Source of the DNA: Macrostomum lignano
Taxonomy: Eukaryota
Direction of reading: 5' to 3'
Length of the DNA: 64,000 bases
Assembly: GCA_002269645.1 (NCBI GenBank)
Contig: NIVC01002479.1
Span: 62,001 to 126,000, forward strand
In this document: in pieces, positions 24,038 to 59,526 of the stretch
Position numbering within the stretch: position 1 is the stretch's first letter
How the letters are laid out: every line of letters begins with the position of its first letter
The notes under the pieces: model-generated
The model's database searches: none
The model's input: only the letters and a program-made list of their open reading frames with translations
What the model was told of the DNA's origin: nothing
Program-made: the position numbers and the translations under genes

Positions 24038-24385
24038 CAAAGCATCTGAATGATGAAGCATCTGAATGATGAAGCATCTGAATGATGAAGCATCTGAATG
24101 ATGAAGCATCTGAATGATGAAGCATCTGAATGATGAAGCATCTGAATGATGAAGCATCTGAATGATGAAGCATCTGAATGATGAAGCATCTGAATGATGA
24201 AGCATCTGAATGATGAAGCATCTGAATGATGAAGCATCTGAATGATGAAGCATCTGAATGATAAAGCATCTGAATGATAAAGCATCTGAATGATGAAGCA
24301 TCTGAATGATGAAGCATCTGAATGATGAAGCATCTGAATGATGAAGCATCTGAATGATGAAGCATCTGGATGATGAAGCACCTGA
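24038..24385. repeat. Intronic minisatellite, 16-bp unit TCTGAATGATGAAGCA (CLC intron 4)
   Basis: Near-perfect tandem copies; explains the [16 protein letters not shown] ORFs. Confidence 0.95.
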
Positions 24386-24435
24386 ATGACGCTACGAACA
24401 CACGAAAGATAAAGCATCTGATCCTTCAAACCAAC

Positions 24436-25161: not shown

Positions 25162-25189
25162 CTGGAAAATAATGCGGAACATCAGCTTT

Positions 25190-30600: not shown

Positions 30601-31640
30601 AATATCTGATGCATATTGTGCAAGTTTTTATTTTTTAAATATAAACCTAAATAGTAAGTTCTAACATAAAATGTAATTATAAAATAGGCTAGGCTCTAAC
30701 AATAAACTATTTCAACTTTTAATCAATCTTTATATTAATTGAATAAATATATATGATTAGTGGCTAAATTTCTACAGGCTAATAGACCATACTGATACAC
30801 ATATGATACACATTTGTAAAGTTTTAACAAACTTCTTGTTGTCTTAAGTTAGCCTTATTTCCCTTAGTAAAGAAACAACTTCTTGTTTTATGCTCAATAT
30901 GTTTACTATAAAAGGAAAAAGAAATTAGACATTGGATATAGCTAAAAAAATACTATAGCCTTCTTATGCATTTTAGGCCTAGTAAAGCTAACTTTTTCTA
31001 GCATAGTTACATTAGTTTTGACTGTTTTGGTTGTATTAAACTTATTCTTATTAATAGTTAAAGGAAAAAATGCTAAAACTATATATTGAACATAAAAATT
31101 TATTGAATAAAGTTATATTATTAAAGAATAATATTTATAGAAAAACTGTATGCTTGCAAAAAAAGAGGCTTCTTGCAATGGATATTCTATTCTAATGTTT
31201 GGAATAAGCATGCCTAGCTAATAAGCATAGGTATAACAAATGGAATACAGGTCTACTTGCTATGCAACATGGGTCTAGAAAAAATTCTCAGTCAAGCTGA
31301 AATTATACACTAGCCTTTTATATTATAGGAATGTCATAACATCATCTTTGATTTTGACAACCTAAATTTGTTTTGTTTTATGTCTTATAAAGATTTAAAC
31401 TGTTTTTTTTGTCTTTTTCCTTGAAAGCTTGAAATTAGGTCTAAGATCAAGATTTGAGAATGTGGTGAAGTCTTAATACTTTTTTAAATTTCTGCATAGA
31501 CTATGAGCTACATGGATTTTTTATGAGTGTTAATCTTGTTTTGCTGAGACAATTTTTTTTTAATTTTCAACATGTTTTCATCAGCTGCAAAGTCAGCTTA
31601 GCAACAGTAATTGCAGAGTAAGTTTCCCAATCATTTCCAG

Positions 31641-32033
31641 GCTCTCAATCCCTGTCTATTCCCACCGAACTTCGCCCAAATTGGGCAGCAATTCACCGAG
31701 GCATTCTATGGCACCCTGCAGACTAACAAGGAGCAATTGGTGAACTTCTATCACGACCAGGCTATGCTAACCTACGAGGGTAGCCAGGTCCAAGGCAAAG
31801 CTGGCATCCTTGAAAAGTACAAGTCGTTGTCGTTTCAACGGATCGCCGCTGCGGTGACCAATGCCGACTACCAGCCAATGGAGAATGGCGTGCTCATCGC
31901 TGTCAATGGCCAGCTGAAAGTGGACGATTCGCCACAGGCGTTGGCCTTCTGCGAGTCATTTTTATTGCGCAATTTTGGCGGCAATTTCGCCATTGTGAAT
32001 CACGTGTTTCGGCTTAGCATTCATAATTTTTAG
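31641..32033 (+). CDS. NTF2: Nuclear transport factor 2 (initiator Met not encoded here)
   Basis: ALNP...FAQIGQQFTEAFY...FYHDQAMLTYEGSQVQGKAGILEK...ADYQP...VNGQLKVDD...NHVFRLSIHNF*; acceptor atttccag| at 31640. Confidence 0.9.
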   Translation, partial: ALNPCLFPPNFAQIGQQFTEAFYGTLQTNKEQLVNFYHDQAMLTYEGSQVQGKAGILEKYKSLSFQRIAAAVTNADYQPMENGVLIAVNGQLKVDDSPQALAFCESFLLRNFGGNFAIVNHVFRLSIHNF

Positions 32034-36237: not shown

Positions 36238-36832
36238 TCAATCCAGTCGGCCGGTGGCCCGCAGCGGCAGCATCGGGATCTGCACTTCCGCCCGGGCACC
36301 TGCAGCTGCTTCCGGGCCGACGGCGGACTCCACCGCGTCACTGGCGTGCCAGTTGGAGGCGGCTGGCAGCGTGGTGCCCCCGCCGAACCCACTGCGGCCG
36401 CCCAGCATCTGCCTGGCGCCGCCGCCACCGCCGCCGCGGCCCTGAGCTCGAAGCTCCGACCGGCAGCAGCCGCAGCGGCTAAATGTCAACCGGAACTGAC
36501 GCCGGAAATTGCGACTAAACGCCGTGTACAGCAGGGGATTAACGGCCGAATTGGCGTAGATCATCGCCATCACGACCGTCTTGGCCGTGTCCGGCCGGAT
36601 CGGCTGGTAGCCGGCGATGCGGAACACCACCTCCAGCAGCTTGGACAGGTAGCACACAAAGTACACAATCACGCAGGCAATCAGCATCTTCACCACCTGC
36701 TGCCGGCCGGCTATCGCTGGATTGTCGCTGCGCTTCTGTCGACGCTTCGGCTTCTGCTGCTGCTGCGGCTGCTGCTGAACAGTGATGGCACTTGGGCCGC
36801 TCATTGCAGCGGAGCTAGGAACGGCCTGGCTC
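36238..36832 (-). CDS. Class A (rhodopsin-type) neuropeptide GPCR, exon 3 (ICL3, TM6, TM7, C-tail)
   Basis: RQQVVKMLIACVIVYFVCY...MIYANSAVNPLLYTAFSRNFRRQF (NPxxY, helix 8); acceptor caacag|G, phase 2. Confidence 0.9.
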
Positions 36833-36849
36833 CTGTTGGGGGGGATGGG

Positions 36850-37917
36850 GAACAGGATGGATTGCTAGTCTAGCCAATTAGGGATGATGGAACAGAATGG
36901 ATTGCTAGACTTGCCAATTAGGGATGATGGAACAGAATGGATTGCTAGACTTGCCAATTAGGGATGATGGAACAGGATGGATTGCTAGTCTATCCAATCA
37001 GGGATGATGGTACAGAATGGATTGCTAGACTAGCCGATTAGGGATGATGGAACAGAATGGATTGCTAGACTTGCCAATTAGGGATGATGGACCAGGATGG
37101 ATTGCTAGTCTATCCAATCAGGGATGATGGAACAGAATGGATTGCTAGACTAGCAAATTAGGAATGATGGAACAGAATGGATTGCTAGACTAGCCAATTA
37201 GGGATGATGGAACAGGATGGATTGCTAGTCTATCCAATCAGGGATGATGGAACAGAATGGATTGCTAGACTAGCCAATTAGGGATGATGGAACAGGATGG
37301 ATTGCTAGTCTATCCAATCAGGGATGATGGAACAGAATGGATTGCTAGACTAGCCAATCAGGGATGATGGAACAGAATGGATTGCTAGACTAGCCAATTA
37401 GGGATGATGGAACAGGATGGATTGCTAGTCTAGCCAATCAGGGATGATGGAACAGAATGGATTGCTAGACTAGCCAATTAGGGATGATGGAACAGAATGG
37501 ATTGCTAGACTAGCCAATTAGGGATGATGGAACAGGATGGATTGCTAGTCTATCCAATCAGGGATGATGGAACAGAATGGATTGCTAGACTAGCCAATCA
37601 GGGATGATGGAACAGAATGGATTGCTAGACTAGCCAATTAGGGATGATGGAACAGAATGGATTGCTAGACTAGCCAATTAGGGATGATGGAACAGGATGG
37701 ATTGCTAGTCTATCCAATCAGGGATGATGGAACAGAATGGATTGCTAGACTAGCAAATTAGAAATGATGGAACAGAATGGATTGCTAGACTAGCCAATTA
37801 GGGATGATGGAACAGAATGGATTGCTAGACTTGCCAATTAGGGATGATGGAACAGAATGGATTGCTAGTCTAGCCAATTAGGGATGATGGAACAGAATGG
37901 ATTGCTAGTCTAGCCAG
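36850..37917. repeat. Intronic minisatellite, 40-bp unit (GPCR intron 2)
   Basis: ATTGCTAGACTAGCCAATYAGGGATGATGGAACAGAATGG in tandem; fills almost the whole intron. Confidence 0.95.
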
Positions 37918-37965
37918 CACTGACGATCAAGGAATAAAAAAGGTTGCTTATCTATCAGCCCTCAC

Positions 37966-38334
37966 CTGGCAACCGCCTGCTGCTGCTGTCCAGCGCAGTT
38001 GATTCTAAGCTGAGCGTGGGCGCCAAACGAGCCAAACAGAGCGGCGCTCATTCGGCTGTAGAGCACCACTTGCAGGCACAGGGGAAGAAAGTAGAACACG
38101 GCCAGCTCCGCCATGCCGATGGCGTTGCTGATCCGCATCTGCTCGGCCAGGGTGTCCGCGTATCTGGACACACAGCGCCTGTGCATCTGCGGCGGCACGG
38201 GCATCACGGTGAGGAATACGAGACTCTGTGAGGCTAAGCCGAGGCCGAGAAACCAGCAGCAGGCCAGGGTTAGGATGGTGCGCCGACGAGAGAACCACAG
38301 GTGGGCGCGCATCGGGTGGACAATGGCCACGTAG
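37966..38334 (-). CDS. Neuropeptide GPCR, exon 2 (TM4-TM5)
   Basis: R-YVAIVHPMRAH...CCWFLGLGLAS...FYFLPLCLQVVLYSRM; cccgcag|C and AG|GTGAGG junctions. Confidence 0.9.
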
Positions 38335-38399
38335 CTGCGGGATAAATCGTTTTAAAGCGATCATTTTCGCACCTTTTATCGTAATTACTGTCTGTACAC

Positions 38400-38740
38400 A
38401 CCCCAATCTGCACCCACCTCAATCCGCACCCACATCACTCCGCACCCACCTCACTCCGCACCCACCTCACTCCGCACCCACCTCACTCCGCACCCACCTC
38501 ACTCCGCACCCACCTCACTCCGCACCCACCTCACTCCGCACCCACCTCACTCCGCACCCACCTCACTCCGCACCCCCTCATTCTGCACCCACCTCACTCC
38601 GTACCCACCCCACTCCGCACCCCCTCATTCTGCACCCAGCTCACTCCGCACCCAGCTCACTCCGCACCCACCTCACTCCGCACCCACCTCACTCCTCACC
38701 CACCTCACTCCGCACCCACCCCAATCCGCACCCACTCCAT
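38400..38740. repeat. Minisatellite, 16-bp unit CTCACTCCGCACCCAC
   Basis: Tandem copies near the acceptor of GPCR intron 1. Confidence 0.9.
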
Positions 38741-39477
38741 TCCGCCTGCAAGCATTCAGTATACCGAAACATTAAAATTGTAGATATTTTGCCGAAAGTT
38801 AATTTTTTTATCGTTGCTTCACATACGAGCTACAGTAGATTACATTCTTCTGTACTTCATCTATACAGCATTTTTTATCCATGGACTAAAAGTTATTAAA
38901 TACGCAGCCTGCAGCATGCCACAGCACTGCCAGAGGAAGGCCTTTGCAAAGAATTTGGCTTTTGTGGAAGCTGCTGGCAGTCTGGCCAACAGTCCCAGAG
39001 ACTCGTCAAATTGTCAAATTCTTACTGCCGCCGCTGCTGTTGCTACGCCAAAAACCGAATCGCTCTCCATCTGGCCGCCAGAATACCAATCTTCCCCTAA
39101 GCTCTGGCCATTATTTGCCTTCGCGCATTTCAGCTTCCTGAGGTTTCTGGGAAAGACATCTCTCAGGGTTCGATTCCGCCGCTTGTGCTGCGCTGCCTGG
39201 TTCAGGGGTTCGTCTTTGGTCCCTTGGCGACCTCCGGCCGTCAATAATGGGGCAATAATCACGTTTCACTGGGGGGAGGGGGAGGTAGCTTAGCGATCCA
39301 TCAGCGAATTAGCATCAGCTGCCCGCCTGGCCTCTGCATGCTGCCTTGGCCTTTGTTCGGTCCAACATTCCCCAGCAGTTAAAACTCAGTTATTGCAAAC
39401 TAAGTTCGCTGTAACCCTCCCGACTGTAAAGCTCCATTGTACCCGGGTTCGATTCCGCTCGCTGCCAAGTTAAATTG

Positions 39478-39693
39478 ACTAGCTAACTAACTAACTGAAT
39501 AACTGACTAACTAACTAACTAACTGAATAACTAACTAACTAACTAACTAACTAACTGAATAACTAACTAACTAACTAACTAACTAACTGACTGACTAACT
39601 AACTAACTAACTAACTAACTGAATAACTGACTAACTAACTAACTAACTAACTGAATAACTAACTAACTAATTAACTAACTAACTGAATAACTG

Positions 39694-39724
<31 letters not shown>

Positions 39725-39791
39725 GAATAACTAACTAACTAATTAACTAACTAACTGAATAACTGACTAACTAACTAACTAACTAACTGAA

Positions 39792-39881
<90 letters not shown>

Positions 39882-39965
39882 GCTAACTAACTGACTAACT
39901 AACTAACTAACTAACTGAATAACTGAATAACTAACTAACTAATTAACTAACTAACTGAATAACTG

Positions 39966-40000
<35 letters not shown>

Positions 40001-40027
40001 GAATAACTAACTAACGAACTAACTAAC
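39478..40027. repeat. (CTAA)n microsatellite with CTGA/ATAA variants
   Basis: Direct reading. Confidence 0.97.
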
Positions 40028-40689
40028 TTTTTGCCCCTTTGAACTTTTAAATCGCTTAGACTTCAGCTTATAATGAGAGTAACTAAGGCCTCAGCACTTC
40101 AGGTGAGAGCTGATACTGGGCGATCTCTATGCTTAAAAAAAGGAGAAACCTTTCGCGATTTGAGTAGATTCTGAGAGACCTTGCCGGAAAAGCTTTTACG
40201 AGCTACTACGAGCACTTATAAATAAGCACCTGAGCATTATTGCTGCGAAAAAGCTCACTGCACCCTTATGTCTGACCGCGCTGAGCACATCCTGTCCGTA
40301 CAAGCAGCAAGTGAGCAATGCGCTTCGGAGCTGCAGCAAGTCTCGCCATCAATCAACATAAAGGAGCCGTTCTGGGCGCAACCCGGATGTCCGGGCGGCT
40401 GCCTCCACTTTTCTCCTCTCCATAATCGGCATTTACGATTGCTAAAGGCCTATTTAGCGTCTCCGGAGAGCAAGAACTTGCTTAGCTTAGTGCTTTTACG
40501 CTAGCCACTGCTCGTAGTACGTGTAATTAGCTATGAAAATGAATGCTAATACGAGAGCCATTGATTTTCTTGATTTTCTTTGAACTGGCTGATGCAGTTC
40601 AGAGAAAAACTGCATTTTGCATTTTGGGAATTTTGGCCACACGTCTCAATTGGAGGGTAATTTCCATTGATGCATCACTTCTCCGCCTC

Positions 40690-41765
40690 TCAGCTCCCTC
40701 TCCATCTCTCTCTCCCCCTCTCCCTCTCTTCCTCTCTGTCTCCCTCTCTATCTCTCTCTGCCTCTCCCTCCATCTCCCCCCTCTGTCTCTTCCTCTGTCC
40801 CCCTCTCTCTCCCTCTGTCTCTCCCTCCGTCTCTCCCATCTCTGTATCTCCCCTCTCTATCTCTCCCATCTCTGTCTCTCCCCTCTCTGTCTCTCCCATC
40901 TGTCTCTCCCATCTCTGTCTCTCCCATCTCTGTCTCCCCCTCTCTGTCTCTCCTATCTCTGTCTCTCCCATCTCTGTCTCTCCCCTCTCTGTATCTCCCC
41001 TCTGTCTCTCCTATCTCTGTCTCTCCCCTCTCTGTCTCTCTCCTCTCTGTATCTCCCATCTCTGTCTTTCCCATCTGTCTCTCCCATCTCTGTCTCTCCC
41101 ATCTCTGTCTCTCCCCTCTCTGTCTTTCCCATCTGTCTCTCCCATCTCTGTCTCTCCCATCTCTGTCTCTCCCCTCTCTGTCTCTCCCATCTGTCTCTCC
41201 CATCTCTGTCTCTCCCATCTCTGTCTCTCCCCTCTCTGTCTCTCCCATCTCTGTCTCTCCCCTCTCTGTCTCTCCCATCTCTGTCTCTCCCCTCTCTGTA
41301 TCTCCCCTCTGTCTCTCCTATCTCTGTCTCTCCCCTCTCTGTCTCTCTCCTCTCTGTCTCTCCCATCTCTGTCTCTCCCCTTTCTGTCTCTCCCATCTGT
41401 CTCTTCCCTCTCTGTATCTCCCCTCTGTCTCTCCTATCTCTGTCTCTCCCCTCTCTGTCTCTTCCCTCTCTGTCTACCCTCTCTGTATCTCCACTCTGTC
41501 TCTCTCTCTCCCTCTCCATCTCCCTCTGTCTGTCCCCCTCTCTCTCCCTCCGTCTCTCCCTCCGTCTCTCCCATCTCTGTCTCTCCCTCTGTCTCTCCCC
41601 TCTCTGTATCTCCCCTCTCTGTCTCTCCCCTCTCTGTCCCTCCCATCTGTGTCTCTCCCCTCTCTGTCTCTCCCCTGTCTCTCTCCCCTCTCTGTATCTT
41701 CCCTCTCTGTCTCCCCTCTCTGTCTCTTTCTCCTTCTCCCTCTCCGTCTACCTCTCCCTCTTCCT
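40690..41765. repeat. CT-rich degenerate microsatellite (TCTGTCTCTCCC-type)
   Basis: Polypyrimidine low-complexity tract. Confidence 0.95.
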
Positions 41766-42334
41766 TTCTTAGTTATCTATCTTGCATCCGTTTCTCTCTC
41801 TTTCTCGCCAATTGATGCGTAATTAATTTTATTACGTGTATACTTATACACTTGTACTCACAAAGTTTTTTACGTTTTTGACGTTAAATATTGGGCAATA
41901 GAGTACTATATGGTATAGAAGTACGATGTAAATATACAGTCACCTTTCTTCCATCTCTGTCATAACAATCTATCAGTCTATCAAGCAGGAGCTGCGGACT
42001 TCCGCGGTGCGCCCATCAGAGAGAGGCCCTGTCTACATTGCCAACCGTAAATCACCCGCGCGCACTGGGTCAAGACTGCAGATGAAGGGCAGGCAGGCTT
42101 GCCTAGCGCTTCCGTTTCTTGAGTTCTGGCAGCGCGGGACCGGAAGGCCGCTAAACCAGAATGGAAAGTGATCGTCACTGAGTGGACTGGGGTTGCAGGG
42201 AGTGCAGCAATAGACACCAGATCCCCCTGGGCCATTAATGGAGGCTCTGTCTCTGCCATATTTGGAAATCGAAGTCGAATGGACTGATGCTTGATTCACG
42301 CCAAGTAGCTATCAATTCCACTTTTAGGCAGACT

Positions 42335-42595
42335 GACCCGACCAGTCACAATGCACCCACTCAGACAGTCCCACTTCTGACGCGGCAAAGATCAAAGAGA
42401 CCCGACCAGTCACAATGCACCCATTCAGACAGTCCCACTTCTGGCGCGGCAAAGATCAAAGAGACCTAACCAGTCACAATGCACCCATTCAGACAGTCCC
42501 ACTTCTGACGCGGCAAAGATCAAAGAGACCCGACCAGTCACAATGCACCCATTCAGACAGTCCCACTTCTGGCGCGGCAAAGATCAAAGAGACCC
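42335..42595. repeat. 64-bp tandem repeat, 4 copies
   Basis: GACCCGACCAGTCACAATGCACCCA... at 42335, 42399 and two further copies. Confidence 0.9.
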
Positions 42596-43467
42596 AGCTT
42601 GGTATATTGGAAATATATGAACGAATCTTGCACCAATACAAAATTGTCACAAAATCAGTAATTGAATGTTTTTTGCATTTATTAGCTAGGTTTTTTCTAA
42701 TGCAACCTTATTATCATGGGTACACAATCTCCAGACTAATTATGCTATATAAATTACACAGAGTACAAAATACAAAACTGGGATAGCAAGATCCTGAAAT
42801 GAACTATTATCAGCATCTGAGCTCGTCTTGGCGAAAATTTGGAAAGCTAATCATTAGCAGCATATTTCCTCTGAGCTGACCGCTCCGTGTGCGATGGCGG
42901 CTCCCTGACCGGAATAGGCGACAGAAGCCATATTTCCAGCTCAATTTCTAGTAAAAATGGGAGCATTGTAAAATCCTTCCTATTCGTATCCGGTAGCTCC
43001 TTTCGCTCCCCCCGTTTCTCCTTCTTCCCAGTAGCCTACTGGGATCTCTCGATCCTAAGGCGCGATGGTTCGCCTCCGGTAATTTGCTAACAAAATCCAT
43101 ATTTAGAAGGTAATGATGGGGGTCGAGCTTTTCCGTGTGTGTTTGTGTGTGTGGGTGTTTGTGTGTGTTACGCCAACATTGATTCACAGCGCTCTCTGTT
43201 GAGCAGAACCGACTCTTTCTGCCAGTGATGCTGCATGATGGGGGATGGGGCTGAGGGTGTCACCGCTCGGGTGTCCGGCTTGCTCTGCTAGCAGTCTCCT
43301 GAGCTCAAATTACTGCTGCAAAAATGCCATTTTTGACGTTTTTAGGTTAAGCTTTTGTTAAAGTATTCATCTCTTGCTGTTGTTGCTCCTGACGCTGCTC
43401 GATCCGGACACAGTACATCACAGGCACGGTTCTGGACCCTGTCACTGACTCCTGACAATGGTTTTAG

Positions 43468-44130
43468 CACCTCTGACACTCATTCTATCACCTCTGACAC
43501 TCATTCTATCACCTCTGACACTCATTCTATCACCTCTGACACTCATTCTATCACCTCTGACACTCATTCTATCACCTCTGACACTCATTCTATCACCTCT
43601 GACACTCATTCTATCACCTCTGACACTCATTCTATCACCTCTGACACTCATTCTATCACCTCTGACACTCATTCTATCACCTCTGACACTCATTCTATCA
43701 CCTCTGACACTCATTCTATCACCTCTGACACTCATTCTATCACCTCTGACACTCATTCTATCACTCTGACACTCATTCTATCACCTCTGACACTCATTCT
43801 ATCACCTCTGACACTCATTCTATCACCTCTGACACTCATTCTATCACCTCTGACACTCATTCTATCACTCTGACACTCATTCTATCACCTCTGACACTCA
43901 TTCTATCACCTCTGACACTCATTCTATCACCTCTGACACTCATTCTATCACCTCTGACACTCATTCTATCACCTCTGACACTCATTCTATCACCTCTGAC
44001 ACTCATTCTATCACCTCTGACACTCATTCTATCACCTCTGACACTCATTCTATCACCTCTGACACTCATTCTATCACCTCTGACACTCATTCTATCACCT
44101 CTGACACTCATTCTATCACCTCTGACACTG
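43468..44130. repeat. Minisatellite, 21-bp unit TCTATCACCTCTGACACTCAT
   Basis: About 31 near-perfect copies. Confidence 0.97.
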
Positions 44131-44596
44131 ATTCTTTCACGCAAACTTATTTTTACACCTCCTTTCTGGCACAGATTTTGGCCACCGGTAATGTCTTCCA
44201 TGATCCTTTTCCAAATCTGAGCTCCCATATCTCGGGCAGTCAGCAGCTACTCAATGTGAGAAGCTACTCAGTCAACAACTCCCGAAAATAAGTCGCATCG
44301 ATCGCGTCGGATAACAACTTGAGTAAGAAGGCTGGCTGGCACAGAGACGAGAGCCAGAGCTGCCCCAGGCTAATTGGCATGCAGGTCAGGATTTGCTCAC
44401 TCGATACCGGACCAAAATGTACCACTAACCCGAATGAATACTCGTATAGCTGCGCTGATTGCTCCCGATGAGCTGTCCGTCAACTGATGCAGCTTGCGCT
44501 TACGTGCACAAATATTAATGACTTGCTGACTGGGATTAGGGAGATTAGCAGCTAGCTGGCGGTTTGCACAATTGTGCTCGGCATTATGGAACCTTT

Positions 44597-45125
44597 AATT
44601 CGGATTCAGATTCGGATTCGGATTTGGATTCGGATTCGGATTCGGATTCAGATTCGGATTCAGATTCAGATTCGGATTCGGATTCAGATTCGGATTCGAA
44701 TTCAGATTCGGATTCGGATTCGGATTCGGATTTGGATTCGGATTCGGATTCGGATTCAGATTCGGATTCAGATTCAGATTCAGATTCGGATTCGGATTCA
44801 GATTCGGATTCGAATTCAGATTCGGATTCGGATTCGGATTTGGATTCGGATTCAGATTCGGATTTAGATTCAGATTCAGATTCGGATTCAGATTCGGATT
44901 CAGATTCGGATTCAGATTCAGATTCGGATTCTGATTTGGATTCGGATTCAGATTCGGATTCAGATTTAGATTCGGATTCGGATTCAGATTTAGATTCAGA
45001 TTCGGATTCGGATTCGGATTCGGATTCGGATTCGGATTCAGATTTAGATTCAGATTCGGATTCGGATTCGGATTTAGATTCAGATTTAGATTCGGATTCG
45101 GATTCAGATTCGGATTCGGATTCAG
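44597..45125. repeat. Hexanucleotide microsatellite (GATTCG/GATTCA)n
   Basis: Direct reading; produces spurious SD/ES-repeat ORFs. Confidence 0.95.
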
Positions 45126-45862
45126 GCTTTCTCTTGATTTGATTCAGACCAGAGCATACTTGCGCTCTCTCGCAGCAGTTTCTCAGTCCGATTTTCACAG
45201 AGTAGCGAAGGCTGCATGTGCCGGAGCGGGCAACCCGAACCGCCTACCAAAGTGTCGGCAAGGCTGAAAGCAACGCGCAGTGGCAACTCCCAGCAAGTGG
45301 AGCTCTGCTTAGAAAGCGATTGTCTGCAGAACCCCCCCCCCCCCCCCAGAATGCTGCTACTATTGATCTTTCTCGCGCACAAGCAACAGCGGCAGGGAGG
45401 GTAGAGGCAGCTGGGCCTCATCGCAGCTCCCCCTGTCCCCAGTAACCATAAATGCAAACTCGAAGACGAAACCCTGAAAGAGGAAGGATTAGCCGTTTCC
45501 GTCCCTTACGTTCCCTCCCTCCCTCCTTCGCCATCATTCCCTCTCCTCTCAGGGCAAACTCTACAGCCAGTGAAGGTAAAAAATGTAAAAAAAAGTCCCC
45601 AGCAACGAGAGACCTGTCCCTTGCATCTGGTCGAGCTCCCGTCGGCCCTCCGGACTCTCTCTAGCAGTGGGCAGACAGAAGTTTACAAAACTGCTGGTCT
45701 GAGTGTAGGATGGCGGGACCATGACAGCTGGGCAGTGACTTGTACTGCCGCAGATTGCGGTCGGATCCCCGATTGTGTGCATCAGCTGCTTCGCATAGCG
45801 CTATGCATAGTGACACTAGCTTGGCACATTGTTATGTCTGTAATACATCATCTCGAATTGTA

Positions 45863-47180
45863 AGCACAGTATGGCACACCTGACACACAGTATGGCATAC
45901 CTGACACACAGTATGGCACACCTGACACACAGTATGGCATACCTGACACACAGTATGGCATACCTGACACACAGTATGGCACACCTGACACACAGTATGG
46001 CATACCTGACACACAGTATGGCATACCTGACACACAGTATGGCACACCTGACACACAGTATGGCATACCTGACACACAGTATGGCACACCTGACACAGTA
46101 TGGCATACCTGACACACAGTATGGCACACCTGACACACAGTATGGCATACCTGACACACAGTATGGCACACCTGACACACAGTATGGCATACCTGACACA
46201 CAGTATGGCATACCTGACACACAGTATGGCACACCTGACACACAGTATGGCATACCTGACACACAGTATGGCACACCTGACACACAGTATGGCACACCTG
46301 ACACACAGTATGGCATACCTGACACACAGTATGGCATACCTGACACACAGTATGGCATACCTGACACACAGTATGGCATACCTGACACACAGTATGGCAC
46401 ACCTGACACACAGTATGGCACACCTGACACACAGTATGGCATACCTGACACACAGTATGGCACACCTGACACACAGTATGGCACACCTGACACACAGTAT
46501 GGCATACCTGACACACAGTATGGCATACCTGACACACAGTATGGCATACCTGACACACAGTATGGCATACCTGACACACAGTATGGCATACCTGACACAC
46601 AGTATGGCATACCTGACACACAGTATGGCACACCTGACACACAGTATGGCATACCTGACACACAGTATGGCACACCTGACACAGTATGGCACACCTGACA
46701 CACAGTATGGCATACCTGACACACAGTATGGCACACCTGACACACAGTATGGCACACCTGACACACAGTATGGCATACCTGACACACAGTATGGCATACC
46801 TGACACACAGTATGGCATACCTGACACACAGTATGGCATACCTGACACACAGTATGGCACACCTGACACACAGTATGGCACACCTGACACACAGTATGGC
46901 ATACCTGACACACAGTATGGCACACCTGACACACAGTATGGCACACCTGACACACAGTATGGCATACCTGACACACAGTATGGCATACCTGACACACAGT
47001 ATGGCATACCTGACACACAGTATGGCATACCTGACACACAGTATGGCACACCTGACACACAGTATGGCACACCTGACACACAGTATGGCATACCTGACAC
47101 ACAGTATGGTATACCTGACACACAGTATGGCATACCTGACACACAGTATGGCATACCTGACACACAGTATGGCACATCTG
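45863..47180. repeat. Minisatellite, 19-bp unit CAGTATGGCAYACCTGACA
   Basis: About 69 copies with a binary C/T variant. Confidence 0.97.
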
Positions 47181-49100
47181 ACACACACATTAAAGCATAT
47201 CCGACACATATTAAAGCACACCTGACACACATATTAAAGCACACCTGACACACACATTAAAGCACACCTGACACACATTAAAGCACACCTGACACACATA
47301 TTAAAGCACACCTGACACACATTAAAGCACACCTGACACACACATTAAAGCACACCTGACACACACATTAAAGCACACCTGACACACACATTAAAGCACA
47401 CCTGACACACATATTAAAGCACACTTGACACACACATTAAAGCACACCTGACACACATATTAAAGCACACCTGACACACATATTAAAGCACACCTGACAC
47501 ACACATATTAAAGCACACCTGACACACACATTAAAGCACACTTGACACACATATTAAAGCACACCTGACACACATATTAAAGCACACCTGACACACACAT
47601 TAAAGCACACCTGACACACATTAAAGCACACCTGACACACACATTAAAGCACACCTGACACACATATTAAAGCACACCTGACACACACATTAAAGCATTA
47701 AAGCACACCTGACACACATTAAAGCACACCTGACACACATATTAAAGCACACCTGACACACATATTAAAGCACACCTGACACACACATTAAAGCACACCT
47801 GACACACATATTAAAGCACACCTGACACACACATTAAAGCACACCTGACACACACATTAAAGCACACCTGACACACACATTAAAGCACACCTGACACACA
47901 CATTAAAGCACACCTGACACACATATTAAAGCACACCTGACACACATATTAAAGCACACCTGACACACACATTAAAGCACACCTGACACACATATTAAAG
48001 CACACCTGACACACATATTAAAGCACACCTGACACACACATTAAAGCACACCTGACACACATATTAAAGCACACCTGACACACATATTAAAGCACACCTG
48101 ACACACACATTAAAGCACACCTGACACACACATTAAAGCACACCTGACACACATATTAAAGCACACCTGACACACATATTAAAGCACACCTGACACACAT
48201 ATTAAAGCACACCTGACACACACATTAAAGCACACCTGACACACACATTAAAGCACACCTGACACACACATTAAAGCACACCTGACACACATATTAAAGC
48301 ACACCTGACACACACATTAAAGCACACCTGACACACACATTAAAGCACACCTGACACACATATTAAAGCACACCTGACACACATATTAAAGCACACCTGA
48401 CACACACATTAAAGCACACCTGACACACATATTAAAGCACACCTGACACACACATTAAAGCACACCTGACACACACATTAAAGCACACCTGACACACACA
48501 TTAAAGCACACCTGACACACACATTAAAGCACACCTGACACACATATTAAAGCACACCTGACACACATATTAAAGCACACCTGACACACACATTAAAGCA
48601 CACCTGACACACATATTAAAGCACACCTGACACACATATTAAAGCACACCTGACACACACATTAAAGCACACCTGACACACATATTAAAGCACACCTGAC
48701 ACACATATTAAAGCACACCTGACACACACATTAAAGCACACCTGACACACACATTAAAGCACACCTGACACACATATTAAAGCACACCTGACACACATAT
48801 TAAAGCACACCTGACACACATATTAAAGCACACCTGACACACACATTAAAGCACACCTGACACACACATTAAAGCACACCTGACACACACATTAAAGCAC
48901 ACCTGACACACATATTAAAGCACACCTGACACACACATTAAAGCACACCTGACACACACATTAAAGCACACCTGACACACATATTAAAGCACACCTGACA
49001 CACATATTAAAGCACACCTGACACACATATTAAAGCACACCTGACACACACATTAAAGCATACCTGACACACACATTAAAACATACCTGACACACCTGAC
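47180..49100. repeat. Minisatellite, 21-23-bp unit CACCTGACACACA(T/C)ATTAAAGCA
   Basis: Abuts the 19-bp array and shares the core CACCTGACACACA. Confidence 0.97.
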
Positions 49101-49149
49101 ACTCAAAACCCCCCGCCATTCGCTCCCGTATAATCCGGCTTGCACTCAC

Positions 49150-49514
49150 CGCTCAACGCACACGGTTGTCAAGGTGATTACCGACGTATAAAACGCAGCG
49201 GTCATGATGAAGCGCAGCAGCTTGCAGGCGGCCAGCCCGAGGAACCAGTGCTGCGAGGCCAACCGGAAGCCGATTTCCGCCAGAGCCAGCAGCAACGACA
49301 GCAGGTCGGAGCAGGCCAGGTTGAGGATGTACAAATTCGTCACCGAGGCGCGCATCCTCTTGTCCATCAGGATGGTGACGATGACCAGGCTGTTGCCGAA
49401 CAGTCCCACCAGCATGATGGCCAGGTACAGCGCCGAGACCAGGACGGTGGCGCCAAGAGATGTGGCGCCCACGCTGACAGGCGCGCTGCCATTGAGAACC
49501 GGAGTGGCGTTCAT
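49150..49514 (-). CDS. Neuropeptide GPCR, exon 1 (N-terminus, TM1-TM3)
   Basis: MNATPVLNGS (N-glycosylation sequons), GLFGNSLVI, NLYILNLACSDLL, CKLLRF...TTVCVE-R. Donor GAGCG|GTGAGT is phase 2 and completes ERY with exon 2. The three exons total 1329 nt = 442 aa plus stop. Confidence 0.92.
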
Positions 49515-51056: not shown

Positions 51057-51682
<626 letters not shown>

Positions 51683-52483
51683 CATCCGTTTTTATAAAGA
51701 AAACTTCACATTCTAGCTTTCTTAAGCCTCTGGAAAAACTCTAATCAAGTCAAGTGAGTTTAGACCTGTCAGCTTAAAATTGTAAGGTCAAAGTTCGCGA
51801 TGAGATGCAGCTTTCAATCGGATTTGTCAATCAGACTCATTCGTCTTTTCAGTCAAATTTCTCTAATGAATTGTCATCATTAGACAATGCTAATCAGCTT
51901 TGTAGGCAGAAAAGAAAACATTTTGCGATTCTTGTTGACTTTTGTTCGATTTTTAACGCACTTGGAACAGCATCAGAAGCACACTACTGCTAGTGGCAGC
52001 AACAGTTTCTGACTGCTTTTTCTGTAGTTTTTACTTTTCTAGGTTTTCCGGGGACCGCATCCAGATTACAGCATCTAAATTTGTTCGTGGTCGAGCAGGT
52101 GGTCGAGAGCGGCCTGCTTGACAACGCCGAGAATGTATCAGAGTGTACAGTGGCCCTGACTTTCAAATCGTCCGGCATGTACACACTCTGCGCCTTGGGG
52201 GTTGTGCCCAAGTTGTGGCTAACTTCTTATTCAGCAAATTCTACTGGGCCTTGAGTCCATTACTACACCGCCCACGAAAGACTTCGGGCATCGGTTGCCT
52301 GCAGTGTCTCTGATGACTAATTCCGACAGCCAATGGCAGGCGCTCAAACCTGAGCAATATGAAGGAAAATTCAATTTAAAAAAATCCCAATTTCTGGGGG
52401 ATCATTGCAGCGGCGGCGCTCTCAGCTTTTTTGTAAAGCATAGAAAAAAACTATTAAGACTATCAACCGTTAAGCGTCGCACA

Positions 52484-53846
52484 ATGCATTCTGCGTCACT
52501 AACGTTAATTGCTCTCCTGACCGTGTCCTGCTGCCTGCTAGGTGAGCATTTTCTAATTATAGTCGCTAATTAATGCACTAATTAAGTTTTTCTTAATAAA
52601 ACTATTTGTATCTATTTCAGAAGTATTGTCTGAGACAAGTTACAATACGAATGGTAAGCCGCAGCTGCAGTCATAATTTCTTTCGTTTCACGTACCCTTT
52701 TTGTATTGATCGTTTGGCTTACAGATGAGGAACCTCACCTTGGGAGACAGGCAGATGGACACCATTGGTACAGGTATTGCTGGTCTGCGAATTGTCTAGT
52801 TACATTTCATGCCTATGCCCAACCTGTGCCCAACTTGTACTCAATCTATACTCAACCTACACTCAACCTGTGCTCAACCTATGCTCAACCTGTGCTCAAC
52901 CTATACTCAGCATACTCATGCTCAACCTATGCTTAAACTGTGCTCAACCTATGCTAAACCTATGCTAAACCTATGCTCAACCTGTGCTCAACCTATACTT
53001 AACCTATGCTCAACCTGTGCTCAACCTGTGCTCAACCTATACTCAACCTACACTCAACCTATGCTCAACCTGTGCTCAACCTGTGCTCAACCTGTGCTCA
53101 ACCTGTGCTCAACCTATACTCAACCTACACTCAACCTATGCTCAACCTGTGCTCAACCTGTGCTCAACCTGTGCTCAACCTATACTCAGCATACTCATGC
53201 TCAACCTATGCTTAACCTGTGCTCAACCTATGCTAAACCTATGCTAAACCTATGCTCAACCTGTGCTCAACCTATACTTAACCTATGCTCAACCTGTGCT
53301 CAACCTGTGCTCAACCTATACTCAACCTACACTCAACCTATGCTCAACCTGTGCTCAACCTGTGCTCAACCTGTGCTCAACCTGTGCTCAACCTATACTC
53401 AACCTACACTCAACCTATGCTCAACCTGTGCTCAACCTGTGCTCAACCTGTGCTCAACCTATACTCAGCATACTCATGCTCAACCTATGCTTAACCTGTG
53501 CTCAACCTATGCTAAACCTATGCTCAACCTGTGCTCAACCTGTGCTCAACCTGTGCTCAACCTATACTCAGCATACTCATGCTCAACCTATGCTTAACCT
53601 GTGCTCAACCTGTGCTCAACCTATGCTAAACCTATGCTCAACCTGTGCTCAACCTATACTCAACCTATGCTCAACCTGTGCTCAACCTATACTCAACCTA
53701 TGCTCAACCTATACTCAACTTGTGCTCAACCTAGCAGGCAGTCGCCGAGCGTCGGTCCCATGACCTGGGAGGACTTCGTACTGGATCAGCTAATGATGGA
53801 GCGCCAGTATCCAGCAGCCAAGAAGCGGTTCGTGACGGACTGGTAG
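52484..53846 (+). CDS. Small secreted prohormone-like peptide, 82 aa, 4 exons (52484-52541, 52621-52653, 52725-52773, 53738-53846)
   Basis: All junctions are canonical and in phase (CTAG|GTGAGC, tttcag|AA, ATG|GTAAGC, ttacag|AT, CAG|GTATTG, tagcag|G). Product: MHSASLTLIALLTVSCCLLEVLSETSYNTNDEEPHLGRQADGHHWYRQSPSVGPMTWEDFVLDQLMMERQYPAAKKRFVTDW*, with a signal peptide and a KKR site. Confidence 0.75.
52815..53733. repeat. Intronic minisatellite, 11-bp unit CTCAACCT(G/A)T(G/A) (peptide gene intron 3)
   Basis: Tandem copies with higher-order blocks; the last unit ends in the acceptor. Confidence 0.95.
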
Positions 53847-54049
53847 AGCAGCAAGATAAAAGCTTTCACCTTGATTAGCAGATCCCAGACGACTTAATGA
53901 AATCATTAAACCTGCAGAGAGGATCTATTAAAGTCAAAACTCGAAAAAAATGACGAGTCAGTCAATAGGGATAATGATATTTTAATTTTTTTAGAATGTC
54001 AGATCTCTTAATCCTTTTAAAAATATACTCTGTCTACGGTGGTGATATT

Positions 54050-56989: not shown

Positions 56990-59040
56990 GAGGAGAGAGA
57001 CTGGCAGAGACAGGGAGAGACAGGGAGAGACAGGGAGAGACAGGGAAAGACAGGGAGAGACAGGGAGAGACAGGGAGAAACAGAGAGAGGCAGGGAGAGA
57101 CAGGGAAAGACAGGGAGAGACAGGGAGAGACAGGGAGAGACAGAGAGAGACAGAGAGAGGCAGGGAGAGACAGGGAGAGACAGAGAGAAACAGAGAGAGG
57201 CAGGGAGAGACAGGGAGAGACAGAGAGAAACAGAGAGAGGCAGGGAGAGACAGGGAAAGACAGGGAGAGACAGGGAGAGACAGGGAGAGACAGAGAGAGA
57301 CAGAGAGAGACAGGGAGAGACAGGGAGAGACAGAGAGAAACAGAGAGAGGCAGGGAGAGACAGGGAAAGACAGGGAGAGACAGGGAGAGACAGGGAGAGA
57401 CAGAGAGAGACAGAGAGAGGCAGGGAGAGAGACAGGGAGAGACAGGGAGAGACAGGGAGAGACAGGGGGAGACAAGGAGAGACAGGGAGAGAGACAGGGA
57501 AAGACAGAGAGAGACAGAGAGAGGCAGGGAGAGAGACAGGGAGAGACAGAGAGAGGCAGGGAGAGACAGGGAAAGACAGGGAGAGACAGGGAGAGACAGG
57601 GAGAGACAGAGAGAGACAGAGAGAGGCAGGGAGAGAGACAGGGAGAGACAGGGAGAGACAGGGAGAGACAGGGGGAGACAAGGAGAGACAGGGAGAGAGA
57701 CAGGGAAAGACAGAGAGAGACAGAGAGAGGCAGGGAGAGAGACAGGGAGAGACAGAGAGAGGCAGGGAGAGACAGGGAGAGACAGGGAGAGACAAGGAGA
57801 GACAGGGAGAGAGGCAGGGAGAGACAGAGAGAGGCAGGGAGGGGCAGGGAGAGACAGGGAAAGACAGAGAGAGACAGGGAGAGACAGGGAGAGACAGGGA
57901 GAGACAGGGAGAGACAGGGACAGACAAGGAGAGACAGGGAGAGACAGGGAGAGACAGGGAGAGACAGGGAGAGACAGGGAGAGACAGGGAGGGAGAGACA
58001 GGGACAGACAAGGAGAGACAGGGAGAGACAGGGACAGACAAGGAGAGACAGGGAGAGACAGGGACAGACAAGGAGAGACAGGGAGAGACAGGGAGAGACA
58101 GGGAGAGACAGGGAGAGACAGGGAGAGACAGGGAGAGACAAGGAGAGACAGGGAGAGAGACAGGGAGAGACAGGGAAAGACAGAGAGAGACAGAGAGAGA
58201 CAGGGAGAGACAGGGAAAGACAGGGAAAGACAGAGAGAGACAGGGAGAGACAGGGAGAGACAGGGAAAGACAGAGAGAGACAGAGAGAGGCAGGGAGAGA
58301 GACAGGGAGAGACAGGGAGAGACAGGGAGAGACAGGGGGAGACAAGGAGAGACAGGGAGAGAGACAGGGAAAGACAGAGAGAGACAGAGAGAGGCAGGGA
58401 GAGAGACAGGGAGAGACAGAGAGAGGCAGGGAGAGACAGGGAGAGACAGGGAGAGACAAGGAGAGACAGGGAGAGAGGCAGGGAGAGACAGAGAGAGGCA
58501 GGGAGGGGCAGGGAGAGACAGGGAAAGACAGAGAGAGACAGAGAGAGGCAGGGAGAGAGACAAGGAGAGAGACAGGGAGAGACAGGGAGAGACAGGGAGA
58601 GACAAGGAGAGACAGGGAGAGAGACAGGGAGAGACAGGGAAAGACAGAGAGAGACAGAGAGAGGCAGGGAGAGACAGGGAGAGACAAGGAGAGACAGGGA
58701 GAGAGACAGGGAGAGACAGGGAAAGACAGAGAGAGACAGAGAGAGGCAGGGAGAGAGACAGGGAGAGACAGGGAGAGACAGGGAGAGACAGAGAGAGGCA
58801 GGGAGAGACAGGGAGAGACAGGGAGAGACAAGGAGAGACAGGGAGAGAGACAGGGAGAGACAGAGAGAGGCAGGGAGGGGCAGGGAGAGACAGGGAAAGA
58901 CAGAGAGAGACAGAGAGAGGCAGGGAGAGGCAGGGAGAGACAGGGAGAGACAGGGAGAGACAAGGAGAGACAGGGAGAGAGACAGGGAGAGACAGAGAGA
59001 GGCAGGGAGAGAGACAGAGAGAGACAGGGAGGGACAGGAA
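56990..59040. repeat. Purine-rich (GAGACAGGGA)n satellite
   Basis: 10-bp unit with variants and block duplications. Confidence 0.96.
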
Positions 59041-59526
59041 GTGACAGGGGCAGACAGTGTTAAAGGGACAGACAGGCCTGGAAGCGGTGGCAGGCGTCGA
59101 TGCAGTGACGGGTCCAATTAGAATAAAACTGGTCCCAGAACGGCAAACGCGCCAGCCAGTTCAGCTGGGATGCAGATGTGAATGTCTGCCAGAATCAGGC
59201 GCACATCTGAGCAGACAGGCAGGTGAGCCAGCTACTTCCAGCTCAAATCTGTGGCGGTCCACTTTGCGTGTCAGCCGGGATGAGCAGCCCATTGCCCCCC
59301 GAATTATCCTGACCGCTTCTTTTTACCGCGGGATTTTCAAGCACCCTTGCGATCCGCTCCTGTAAAAGGTGCGCTGACTCCAACCTTTGTCACGAGAAAA
59401 TCATTCTAACCCTTCCTGAGCTCGAGTGGGGAAGAACCCACACCGGCCGGAAGGACTGATTTAAGAGCTAATCTCTTAATTGGAACTTGCTGTTCTGCCC
59501 GATAATTTAGCTTTCACCGAAGTGCT

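What the first reader, a model, noticed from the sequence alone, without database searches (positions are those of the whole stretch)
52484..53846. Hidden 82-aa micro-exon prohormone not matching any family I recognise
Seen: four small exons (58, 33, 49 and 109 nt) with consensus, phase-compatible splice sites, not resolved by the six-frame track. The product has an h-region LTLIALLTVSCCLL, likely cleavage after VLS, an acidic spacer, HL-GR (possible amidation plus monobasic site), a Gln-initiated QADGHHWYR (possible pyroGlu), and KKR releasing the C-terminal pentapeptide FVTDW. It could be a neuropeptide or a reproductive/seminal peptide.
Basis: partly seen in the sequence, partly recalled or inferred. 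Interest (0 to 1): 0.7.

Follow-up and report, generated by a model that had tools for sequence, protein, structure and literature searches.

The report
Unannotated small secreted-peptide gene, flatworm
The four small exons are really there and join into an 82-residue secreted-looking protein with no known relatives in the flatworm Macrostomum lignano, but whether it is transcribed and cut into hormone-like peptides could not be tested here.

Summary
Exons 52484-52541, 52621-52653, 52725-52773 and 53738-53846 have GT/AG borders and compatible phases.

The window is Macrostomum lignano, a free-living flatworm. At the observed splice-site strength this is the only ATG-exon/short-intron/exon/short-intron chain in 128 kb. 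Shuffled sequence gives 0-0.15 such chains. The N-terminus is a textbook signal peptide. Introns 1-2 are AT-rich, and 53738 is the first usable acceptor after the 920-bp minisatellite in intron 3.

Codon usage is only marginal. No transcript, paralogue or homologue could be found. The one real match is a probably chimeric UniProt model that reuses 23 codons of exon 4.

The cleavage-site content (one KKR, one Gly-Arg) is close to chance. All three lone Arg residues are followed by Gln, which is suggestive.

Best reading: a real, unannotated, lineage-restricted secretory peptide precursor (about 0.65). The prohormone function is plausible but unproven (about 0.3). A peptide-type GPCR gene lies head-to-head 3 kb away. 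If real, this is a new member of a known kind, of modest interest.

The parts
52375..52483 (+). Putative 5' flank or 5' UTR. It holds a TATA-like TTTAAAAA at 52375 and an acceptor-like site gcttttttgtaaag|CAT, with 52439 as the first base after the AG, which could take a spliced leader. The start context is cgcacaATGc, with A at -3.
   Evidence: There is no ATG between 52360 and 52484. The out-of-frame ATGs at 52333 and 52359 open 6-codon uORFs. The in-frame ATG at 52313 has a poor context. The transcription start is inferred, not shown.
52484..52541 (+). Exon 1 (58 nt): start codon and signal peptide MHSASLTLIALLTVSCCLL; ends in phase 1.
   Evidence: donor TAG|GTGAGC, 9.75 bits; Kyte-Doolittle 11-residue means of 1.7-2.3 over residues 4-23.
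52542..52620 (+). Intron 1 (79 nt, 24 % GC).
   Evidence: The acceptor tgtatctatttcag|A scores 6.7 bits.
52621..52653 (+). Exon 2 (33 nt): EVLSETSYNTN, holding the end of the signal peptide and the likely cleavage after VLS.
   Evidence: donor ATG|GTAAGC, 9.11 bits. The -3/-1 rule is met by Val-Leu-Ser|Glu, as read directly from the sequence.
52654..52724 (+). Intron 2 (71 nt, 42 % GC).
   Evidence: The acceptor cgtttggcttacag|A scores 6.77 bits.
52725..52773 (+). Exon 3 (49 nt): DEEPHLGRQADGHHWY plus 2 nt of the Arg47 codon.
   Evidence: donor CAG|GTATTG, 4.45 bits, the weakest site. If the intron is read through, the frame stops at 52806, giving ...HHWYRYCWSANCL*.
52774..53737 (+). Intron 3 (964 nt), almost entirely an 11-bp minisatellite (CCTATGCTCAA, about 82 copies, 52812-53733).
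   Evidence: No acceptor of 3 bits or more lies inside the array. The first one after donor 3 is at 53738.
53738..53846 (+). Exon 4 (109 nt, 60 % GC): (R)QSPSVGPMTWEDFVLDQLMMERQYPAAKKRFVTDW and the stop TAG at 53844-53846.
   Evidence: One search gives a codon log-odds of +9.6 in this frame against -18 and -25 in the other two. One search covers the acceptor. Codons 55-77 are reused by UniProt A0A1I8FR89.
53847..53932 (+). Putative 3' UTR with ATTAAA signals at 53905 and 53927. The downstream 300 nt are 34 % GC.
   Evidence: The poly(A) site itself is not shown.

Best explanation
This is a real but unannotated four-exon gene of Macrostomum lignano. It encodes an 82-residue pre-pro-peptide that seems restricted to this lineage.

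How it most likely works (inferred, not shown):
- The N-terminal 23 residues direct the protein into the ER and are removed after Val-Leu-Ser.
- This leaves a 59-residue acidic, cysteine-free polypeptide that is disordered in its first half.
- The flatworm's PC2-type convertase cuts it in the regulated secretory pathway, at Lys-Lys-Arg77 and probably at the three Arg-Gln sites (R38, R47, R69).
- Gly37 is converted to a C-terminal amide and the new N-terminal Gln residues cyclise to pyroGlu.
- The predicted products are ETSYNTNDEEPHL-NH2, pQADGHHWY, pQSPSVGPMTWEDFVLDQLMME, pQYPAA and FVTDW.

What is shown: the exon structure, the splice signals, the hydrophobic N-terminus and the motifs. What is inferred: transcription, secretion, cleavage and bioactivity.

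My probabilities are about 0.65 that the gene is real, about 0.55 that its product is secreted, and about 0.3 that it is a processed signalling-peptide precursor. The confidence given for this explanation is for the package 'real secretory peptide-precursor gene'.
For: - The exon chain is unique in 128 kb at the observed site strength; shuffles give 0-0.15.
- Donors 1-2 and acceptors 1-2 are as strong as those of the neighbouring, homology-supported GPCR gene, whose sites score 9.6-11.7 and 5.5-7.8 bits.
- Exons are 52, 33, 53 and 60 % GC. Intron 1 is 24 % and the 3' flank is 34 %.
- 53738 is the first acceptor of 3 bits or more after donor 3, and it opens a 36-codon frame ending in a stop.
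- Exon 4 has coding-like codon usage only in the predicted frame.
- The whole CDS scores better than 96.5 % of same-length non-coding samples.
- A lies at -3 of the ATG, and ATTAAA follows the stop.
- The hydrophobic core LTLIALLTVSCCLL is 14 residues long, too short for a membrane span, with V-x-S before the cut (sequence). AF2 puts a helix at 4-27, disorder at 28-56 and helices at 57-81.
- A tribasic site occurs in 3.3 % of shuffles. All three lone Arg are followed by Gln, P = 5e-4.
- M. lignano has a nervous-system PC2 homologue (PMC4490696).
- Planarians carry many lineage-specific 'spp' prohormones (PMC2953531).
- The gene's absence from GenBank annotation is expected. That annotation dropped transcripts judged non-coding and those overlapping annotated repeats (PMC5730564). 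TransDecoder's default minimum ORF is 100 aa (my knowledge).
Against: - No transcript evidence could be obtained.
- No homologue or paralogue turned up in 1.84 billion representatives or in the window.
- Codon log-odds for the CDS is -0.9. This is far below the +37 +/- 12 of known exons (trained on the same exons, so that figure is inflated), and 3.5 % of non-coding samples do as well.
- Exon 3 scores better in another frame.
- Donor 3 and acceptor 3 are only moderate.
- Dibasic plus Gly-basic sites arise in 10.5 % of shuffles. RQ x3 falls to P = 0.054 once all dipeptides are allowed.
- There is only one copy of each putative peptide and no repeated peptide motif.
- An in-frame ATG at 52313 would bury the hydrophobic segment if transcription starts further upstream.
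- The thresholds in the chance test were chosen after the fact.
Confidence: 0.45

Rival explanations
1. It is a chance ORF chain. The exons are fortuitous open segments between fortuitous splice-like sites in repeat-rich intergenic DNA, and no such mRNA or protein exists.
For: - There is no transcript, annotation or homologue.
- Codon usage is marginal, and exon 3 scores better in another frame.
- Intron 3's sites are moderate.
- Micro-exon models are flexible, and at looser thresholds such chains are common in shuffles (5 with and 23 without the signal-peptide filter at donor >= 5 and acceptor >= 4 bits).
Against: - At the observed site strength the expected number per window is 0-0.15, and this is the only hit.
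- A signal peptide, the exon/intron GC contrast, the first-acceptor rule, exon-4 codon usage, a good start context and ATTAAA after the stop all coincide.
Confidence: 0.3
2. The gene is real and its product secreted, but it is not a neuropeptide. It would be one of the fast-evolving, taxon-restricted secreted proteins of gland or reproductive tissue, such as prostate or seminal fluid, adhesive or epidermal glands. It would act as an intact 59-residue protein, or after a single KKR cut.
For: - There is no conservation outside the species, which fits rapidly evolving reproductive or gland proteins (my knowledge of Macrostomum seminal-fluid and reproduction-related gene studies).
- The C-terminal half is predicted helical at pLDDT 74-80, so it may be a folded or amphipathic module rather than a spacer.
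- There are no repeated peptide copies.
- The cleavage-site content is near chance.
Against: - The product is cysteine-free, small and half disordered, which is more typical of processed precursors.
- KKR plus three RQ sites are present.
- A Gly-Arg amidation signal is present.
Confidence: 0.2
3. Exons 1-3 are real but the 3' end is different. One option is that intron 3 is retained, giving a 54-aa product that ends ...HHWYRYCWSANCL with a Cys-x4-Cys pair. The other is that 'exon 4' belongs to, or is shared with, a downstream gene, as in UniProt A0A1I8FR89. That model starts at ATG 53760 and leaves at 53827|53828.
For: - Donor 3 is the weakest site, at 4.45 bits.
- Read-through reaches a stop after 10 codons, at 52806.
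- A published gene model uses the same frame of exon 4 for 23 codons and then splices onward.
- M. lignano has many polycistronic or read-through transcriptional units (PMC5730564).
Against: - The A0A1I8FR89 donor GCG|GTTCGT scores only 2.4 bits.
- The rest of that protein is not within the remaining 10 kb of the window, and it fuses a secretory-gene exon to a cytosolic RNA-binding-type protein, so the model looks chimeric.
- 53738 is the first usable acceptor and keeps the frame open to a stop, with good codon usage.
Confidence: 0.1

Closest known systems
Planarian 'secreted peptide prohormone' (spp) and npp genes (Schmidtea mediterranea; Collins et al. 2010, PMC2953531)
   Same: Both are small flatworm precursors with a signal peptide, basic cleavage sites, Gly-basic amidation signals and N-terminal Gln peptides. 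Many have no relatives outside a narrow lineage and were missed by standard gene prediction.
   Different: There is no sequence similarity to any of them; they are in UniRef and the HMMER search found nothing. None of the known flatworm C-terminal motifs (RFamide, RLamide/MRLamide, PWamide, GGIRY and others) is present. No peptide here has been seen by mass spectrometry, and expression is unknown.
Schistosome micro-exon genes (MEGs)
   Same: Both are flatworm genes for a small secreted protein with a signal-peptide exon followed by very short exons.
   Different: By my knowledge of the family, MEGs are built mostly of many symmetric micro-exons of 6-36 nt that are multiples of three. Here only one exon (33 nt) is symmetric, the 49-nt exon is not, and 167 of 249 coding nt lie in ordinary first and last exons. 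There is no sequence similarity.
GnRH / AKH / corazonin-type precursors
   Same: The product is a small precursor with a Gln-initiated His/Trp/Tyr-containing segment (QADGHHWY) and a longer C-terminal 'associated' part.
   Different: In that family (my knowledge) the pGlu peptide directly follows the signal peptide and ends in Gly-Lys-Arg for amidation. Here the Gln is 16 residues past the predicted cut and is followed by Arg-Gln without Gly. There is no HMMER similarity.
UniProt A0A1I8FR89 (M. lignano 'HABP4_PAI-RBP1 domain-containing protein', ML2 assembly model)
   Same: Its first 23 residues (MTWEDFVLDQLMMERQYPAAKKR) are identical to codons 55-77 of exon 4, in the same frame.
   Different: It starts inside exon 4, ignores exons 1-3, and leaves through a weak donor (2.4 bits) to exons that are not in this window. 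It is most likely a chimeric prediction.

Membership tests
Peptide-hormone / neuropeptide precursor (generic class) | Cleavable N-terminal signal peptide | tested here: met
   The 14-residue hydrophobic core LTLIALLTVSCCLL has Kyte-Doolittle means of 1.7-2.3. Val-x-Ser precedes Glu24 (sequence). AF2 gives a helix at 4-27. These are heuristics only; SignalP was not available. The n-region lacks Lys/Arg.
Peptide-hormone / neuropeptide precursor (generic class) | Peptides flanked by mono- or dibasic convertase sites, beyond chance | tested here: inconclusive
   KKR77 and three Arg-Gln sites are present. In shuffles a tribasic run has P = 0.033, any dibasic site P = 0.43, and RQ x3 P = 5e-4, which becomes 0.054 for any dipeptide.
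Peptide-hormone / neuropeptide precursor (generic class) | Amidation signal (Gly before a basic site) | tested here: inconclusive
   There is one Gly37-Arg38. Such a pair arises in 28 % of shuffles. His at P4 fits the monobasic-site rule (my knowledge).
Peptide-hormone / neuropeptide precursor (generic class) | Spliced mRNA expressed in neurons or endocrine cells that express PC2 and the amidating enzyme | not testable with these tools
   No flatworm transcript collection was reachable.
Peptide-hormone / neuropeptide precursor (generic class) | Conservation of the bioactive segment in related species | tested here: inconclusive
   There was no homologue in 5.8 billion or 1.84 billion protein sets. 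Macrostomum relatives and Logan assemblies of M. lignano seem absent from them: the WD-repeat control found only one NCBI M. lignano protein.
Known flatworm neuropeptide families (FLP/NPF/npy, npp, spp, mpl, ppp, ppl) | Family C-terminal motif or detectable precursor similarity | tested here: not met
   There is no RF/RL/PW-Gly motif in the sequence. Pfam gave 0 families, and there was no HMMER hit to any annotated prohormone.
Schistosome-type micro-exon genes | Most of the CDS made of symmetric micro-exons (multiples of 3, 36 nt or less) | tested here: not met
   The exons are 58, 33, 49 and 109 nt with phases 1, 1 and 2. Only the 33-nt exon qualifies.
GnRH/AKH/corazonin superfamily | pGlu peptide directly after the signal peptide, ending in Gly-Lys/Arg | tested here: not met
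   Gln39 lies 16 residues after the predicted cut. QADGHHWY is followed by Arg-Gln with no Gly (sequence).
HABP4/SERBP1-type gene (as in A0A1I8FR89) | Exon 4 spliced to exons encoding the HABP4_PAI-RBP1 domain | tested here: inconclusive
   Only residues 1-23 of that model map to the window. Its donor scores 2.4 bits. Pfam did not recover the named domain at E <= 0.01.

The most novel reading that the evidence does not exclude
The peptide gene and the divergently oriented, equally unannotated peptide-type GPCR gene form a co-located ligand-receptor pair that shares one 3-kb intergenic control region. The GPCR's ATG is at 49514 on the minus strand, 2970 bp from the peptide ATG. On this reading one of the predicted peptides, for example ETSYNTNDEEPHL-NH2 or pQADGHHWY, is the receptor's cognate ligand. 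That would define a new, flatworm-specific peptidergic signalling system found from genome position alone.
Probability: 0.04. Interest if true: 0.7.

Novelty: new member of a known kind. Interest (0 to 1): 0.3.

Why it matters
If real, this gene adds one orphan secreted or signalling peptide to a regeneration and reproduction model animal whose neuropeptide set is poorly catalogued.

It also shows a systematic blind spot. Short ORFs under 100 aa, split over micro-exons and interrupted by a minisatellite intron, are removed by the filters used for the public M. lignano annotation (PMC5730564). A class of such genes may therefore be missing.

The adjacent orphan peptide-type GPCR gives a cheap, direct functional test. 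If the gene is not real, the case is a useful calibration of how convincing a chance micro-exon chain can look.

Tried and rejected
1. Homology. The word-indexed search, full HMMER over 1.84 billion representatives and Pfam found no family.

2. The second HMMER hit, P0002 (E = 6e-4). It is a 13-residue match (SYNTNDEEPHLGR against SFNDGDEKPHLGR) to a motif repeated six times in a protein made of 'Helicase associated domain' PF03457 repeats. I rejected it as a chance motif match inflated by the repetition.

3. Transcript and paralogue look-ups. Four contiguous ORFs of the locus and its neighbour are not on record.

4. Absence of the 82-aa protein from the databases. I do not count it as evidence against the gene. 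The WD-repeat control found a single NCBI M. lignano protein and no Logan-derived M. lignano fragments. The neighbouring GPCR is also missing.

5. Literature. Searching full texts for six fragments of the peptide gave only an irrelevant Plasmodium paper. No M. lignano neuropeptide catalogue is in the held library, and McVeigh et al. 2009 is not held.

6. Paralogue within the window. There is none.

7. Structured RNA. Rfam gave no match over 49.5-56 kb.

8. Alternative frame for exon 3 (MRNLTLGDRQMDTIGT...). It gives only a 24-aa product with exon 4, so I rejected it.

9. Acceptors inside the minisatellite. None reaches 3 bits.

10. Locus L001, fetched as 'the same contig'. It turned out to be a 94-99.5 % identical duplicate. 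Its copy of the peptide locus is about 36 kb beyond the 10-kb flank limit, so the comparative test could not be run.
Full report
**What is in the sequence**

- The exons are 52484-52541 (58 nt), 52621-52653 (33 nt), 52725-52773 (49 nt) and 53738-53846 (109 nt).
- All introns are GT...AG, and the phases are 1, 1 and 2.
- The 249-nt CDS translates to MHSASLTLIALLTVSCCLLEVLSETSYNTNDEEPHLGRQADGHHWYRQSPSVGPMTWEDFVLDQLMMERQYPAAKKRFVTDW*.
- Introns 1 and 2 are 79 and 71 nt.
- Intron 3 is 964 nt and is almost entirely an 11-bp minisatellite (CCTATGCTCAA, about 82 copies, 52812-53733).

**Where the window comes from**

The only significant database match to the peptide is UniRef100_A0A1I8FR89 of Macrostomum lignano. 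Its first 23 residues equal codons 55-77 of exon 4.

A control search used the 1079-aa WD-repeat ORF at 12856-16095. It hit NCBI 'BOX15_Mlig030421g10 [Macrostomum lignano]' at 100 % identity. The organism is therefore this free-living flatworm.

Its genome is known to be over half repetitive, with 15 % simple and tandem repeats and large duplicated blocks (PMC5730564). This matches the dozens of tandem arrays in the window.

The fetched contig piece L001 (GCA_002269645.1, NIVC01001992.1) is not the window itself. It is a duplicate at 94-99.5 % identity. Across the WD exon the two copies differ at 14 synonymous and 1 non-synonymous codons.

**Is the exon chain more than chance?**

I scored the splice sites with a generic metazoan PWM (frequencies from memory, window background).

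| Site | Score (bits) | Percentile |
|---|---|---|
| Donor 1 | 9.75 | 99.7th of all GT |
| Donor 2 | 9.11 | 99.5th of all GT |
| Donor 3 | 4.45 | 89th of all GT |
| Acceptor 1 | 6.70 | 98th of all AG |
| Acceptor 2 | 6.77 | 98th of all AG |
| Acceptor 3 | 4.78 | 95th of all AG |

The homology-supported GPCR gene next door has sites of similar strength to donors 1-2 and acceptors 1-2.

- **Chain scan.** I scanned both strands for ATG-exon / short intron / exon / short intron / open exon, with sites at least as strong as observed. Only this locus came up, with or without a signal-peptide filter. Block-wise Markov shuffles gave means of 0 and 0.15. At looser thresholds chance chains become common. 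The thresholds were set post hoc, so this argues for reality without proving it.
- **Base composition.** Exons are 52, 33, 53 and 60 % GC. Intron 1 is 24 % and the 3' flank is 34 %.
- **Acceptor choice.** After donor 3, the first acceptor scoring 3 bits or more is exactly 53738. It opens a 36-codon frame that ends in TAG. ATTAAA follows at 53905 and 53927.
- **Codon usage.** I trained on about 6.3 kb of known exons in the window. Exon 4 scores +9.6 in the predicted frame against -18 and -25 in the other two. The whole CDS scores only -0.9. Non-coding samples average -27 +/- 14, and 3.5 % of them reach the observed value. Known coding sequence averages +37 +/- 12. Exon 3 scores better in another frame.
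- **Overall.** I put the probability that this is a real gene at about 0.65.

**The start codon**

ATG 52484 has A at -3. A TATA-like TTTAAAAA lies at 52375. An acceptor-like site whose first exonic base is 52439 scores 4.2 bits and could take the spliced leader that many M. lignano mRNAs carry.

An in-frame ATG at 52313, in a poor context, would add 57 residues and bury the hydrophobic segment if transcription began further upstream. This is unresolved.

**The product**

- Residues 6-19 form a 14-residue hydrophobic core, and V-L-S precedes Glu24 (sequence).
- The 59-residue remainder is acidic (10 D/E, 6 K/R, 3 H) and has no Cys.
- Single-sequence AlphaFold2 gives a helix at 4-27, a disordered stretch at 28-56 and helices at 57-70 and 72-81, with mean pLDDT 65.6.

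In composition-preserving shuffles a dibasic site plus a Gly-basic pair occurs in 10.5 % of cases, so these two are weak evidence. A tribasic run occurs in 3.3 %.

For RQ this has P = 5e-4. Allowing any dipeptide to reach three copies gives P = 0.054. Cleavage after Arg would expose Gln for pyroGlu formation, so every Arg in the mature part sits in a plausible processing context.

M. lignano has a PC2 homologue expressed in the nervous system and needed for development (PMC4490696). Planarians have dozens of lineage-specific prohormones (PMC2953531).

**Relatives**

There are none.
- Pfam gave 0 families.
- The word-indexed search found no candidate.
- Full HMMER over 1.84 billion representatives gave two hits.
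  - The first is the A0A1I8FR89 self-overlap.
  - The second is a 13-residue coincidence with a motif repeated six times in a PF03457 'helicase associated domain' protein. I reject it.
- No paralogue lies in the window.
- No Rfam family matches between 49.5 and 56 kb.

**Why it is unannotated, and why that says little**

- The GenBank annotation of Mlig_3_7 kept only transcripts judged coding by TransDecoder, and it removed transcripts overlapping repeat annotation (PMC5730564).
- An 82-aa ORF is below TransDecoder's default 100 aa (my knowledge), and its intron is a minisatellite. It would fail both filters.
- The neighbouring GPCR is missing from the protein databases too.
- The WD-repeat control found no Logan-derived M. 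lignano fragments. The databases therefore do not sample this species' transcripts.

**The A0A1I8FR89 model**

This model starts at ATG 53760 inside exon 4, in the same frame. It leaves through GCG|GTTCGT (2.4 bits) to exons that are not in the remaining 10 kb of the window. I read it as a chimeric prediction.

At most it hints that a gene finder saw coding potential in this frame. It also defines a rival in which exon 4 is shared with a downstream gene.

**Neighbourhood**

A three-exon rhodopsin-type GPCR lies on the minus strand at 49514-49150, 38334-37966 and 36832-36238. It has an ERY motif across the first junction and an NPLLY motif.
- Its best solved relatives are the cholecystokinin-A, somatostatin, galanin and orexin receptors, at E = 1e-28 to 1e-24.
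- Its best database relatives are insect 'galanin/QRFP-like' and 'somatostatin-like' receptors at 24-38 % identity.
- Its ATG is 2970 bp from the peptide gene's ATG, in divergent orientation.

This may be coincidence. It also suggests a direct ligand test.

**Comparison with known kinds**

The gene works like a small flatworm prohormone of the 'spp' type. It is not a member of any named family.
- It has none of the flatworm C-terminal motifs.
- It is not a MEG: only one symmetric micro-exon.
- It is not GnRH/AKH-like: the Gln is not at the signal cut and no Gly follows the peptide.

**Verdict**

- The locus is most likely a real, unannotated, lineage-restricted secretory peptide-precursor gene. 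Prohormone processing is plausible but untested.
- The novelty class is a new member of a known kind, and the interest is modest (0.3).
- RNA-seq junction counts and comparison with the duplicated locus would settle it quickly.

Noticed in passing
window 36238-49514, minus strand (exons 49514-49150, 38334-37966, 36832-36238): There is a three-exon rhodopsin-type peptide GPCR of 442 aa, with ERY and NPLLY motifs and CYLS in place of CWxP in TM6. Its closest solved structures are the CCK-A, somatostatin, galanin and orexin receptors. No M. lignano protein in the databases matches it, so it is probably unannotated. It lies head-to-head with the peptide gene.
   Followed up: partly
L001 (NIVC01001992.1, record 68767-92813) against window 4956-26550: The fetched M. 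lignano contig is a duplicate of the window region, not the same locus. It is 94-98 % identical in non-coding DNA, with indels, and 99.5 % identical in the WD-repeat exon (14 synonymous to 1 non-synonymous codon differences). This fits the species' hidden polyploidy.
   Followed up: partly
window 53760-53828: UniProt A0A1I8FR89 ('HABP4_PAI-RBP1 domain-containing protein') begins with 23 codons of exon 4 and then continues into sequence absent from the window. It is likely a chimeric gene model of the older ML2 assembly.
   Followed up: partly
window 52774-52808: If intron 3 is not removed, the frame ends ...HHWYR-YCWSANCL*. This is a Cys-x4-Cys C-terminus with Asn-Cys, as in the ring of vasopressin/oxytocin-type peptides, but without the Pro-x-Gly tail. 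It is probably a coincidence.
   Followed up: no
window 52139-52209 and 8975-9047 (minus): A 74-bp dispersed repeat, 81 % identical, lies about 300 bp upstream of the peptide gene's ATG. Another copy is near the cytochrome-b5-like gene region.
   Followed up: no
window 1-5160: A long coiled-coil ORF is built on a 356-bp tandem repeat (11.8 copies at 98 % identity, 1-4210). The array is broken by frame changes between copies, so this is either a repeat-expanded coding exon or an assembly artefact.
   Followed up: no
window 22352-25182, minus strand: A voltage-gated chloride channel (CLC) gene has an N-terminal exon ORF that runs into a 16-bp tandem array (24040-24389), read as [16 protein letters not shown] repeats. 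This is probably an intronic array adjoining the exon.
   Followed up: no
whole window: The window carries dozens of micro- and minisatellite arrays with periods of 4-356 bp, including 45874-49095 (23 bp x 146), 56995-59057 (10 bp x 202) and (ATCT)157 at 51060-51686. They produce many long spurious ORFs in six-frame views.
   Followed up: partly
window 31611-32033 and 12841-18132: An NTF2-domain ORF and a CFAP337/WDR64-type EF-hand plus WD40 gene are present. The latter has a 3.2-kb first exon and two small 3' exons, and equals BOX15_Mlig030421g10 at 99.8 % identity.
   Followed up: partly
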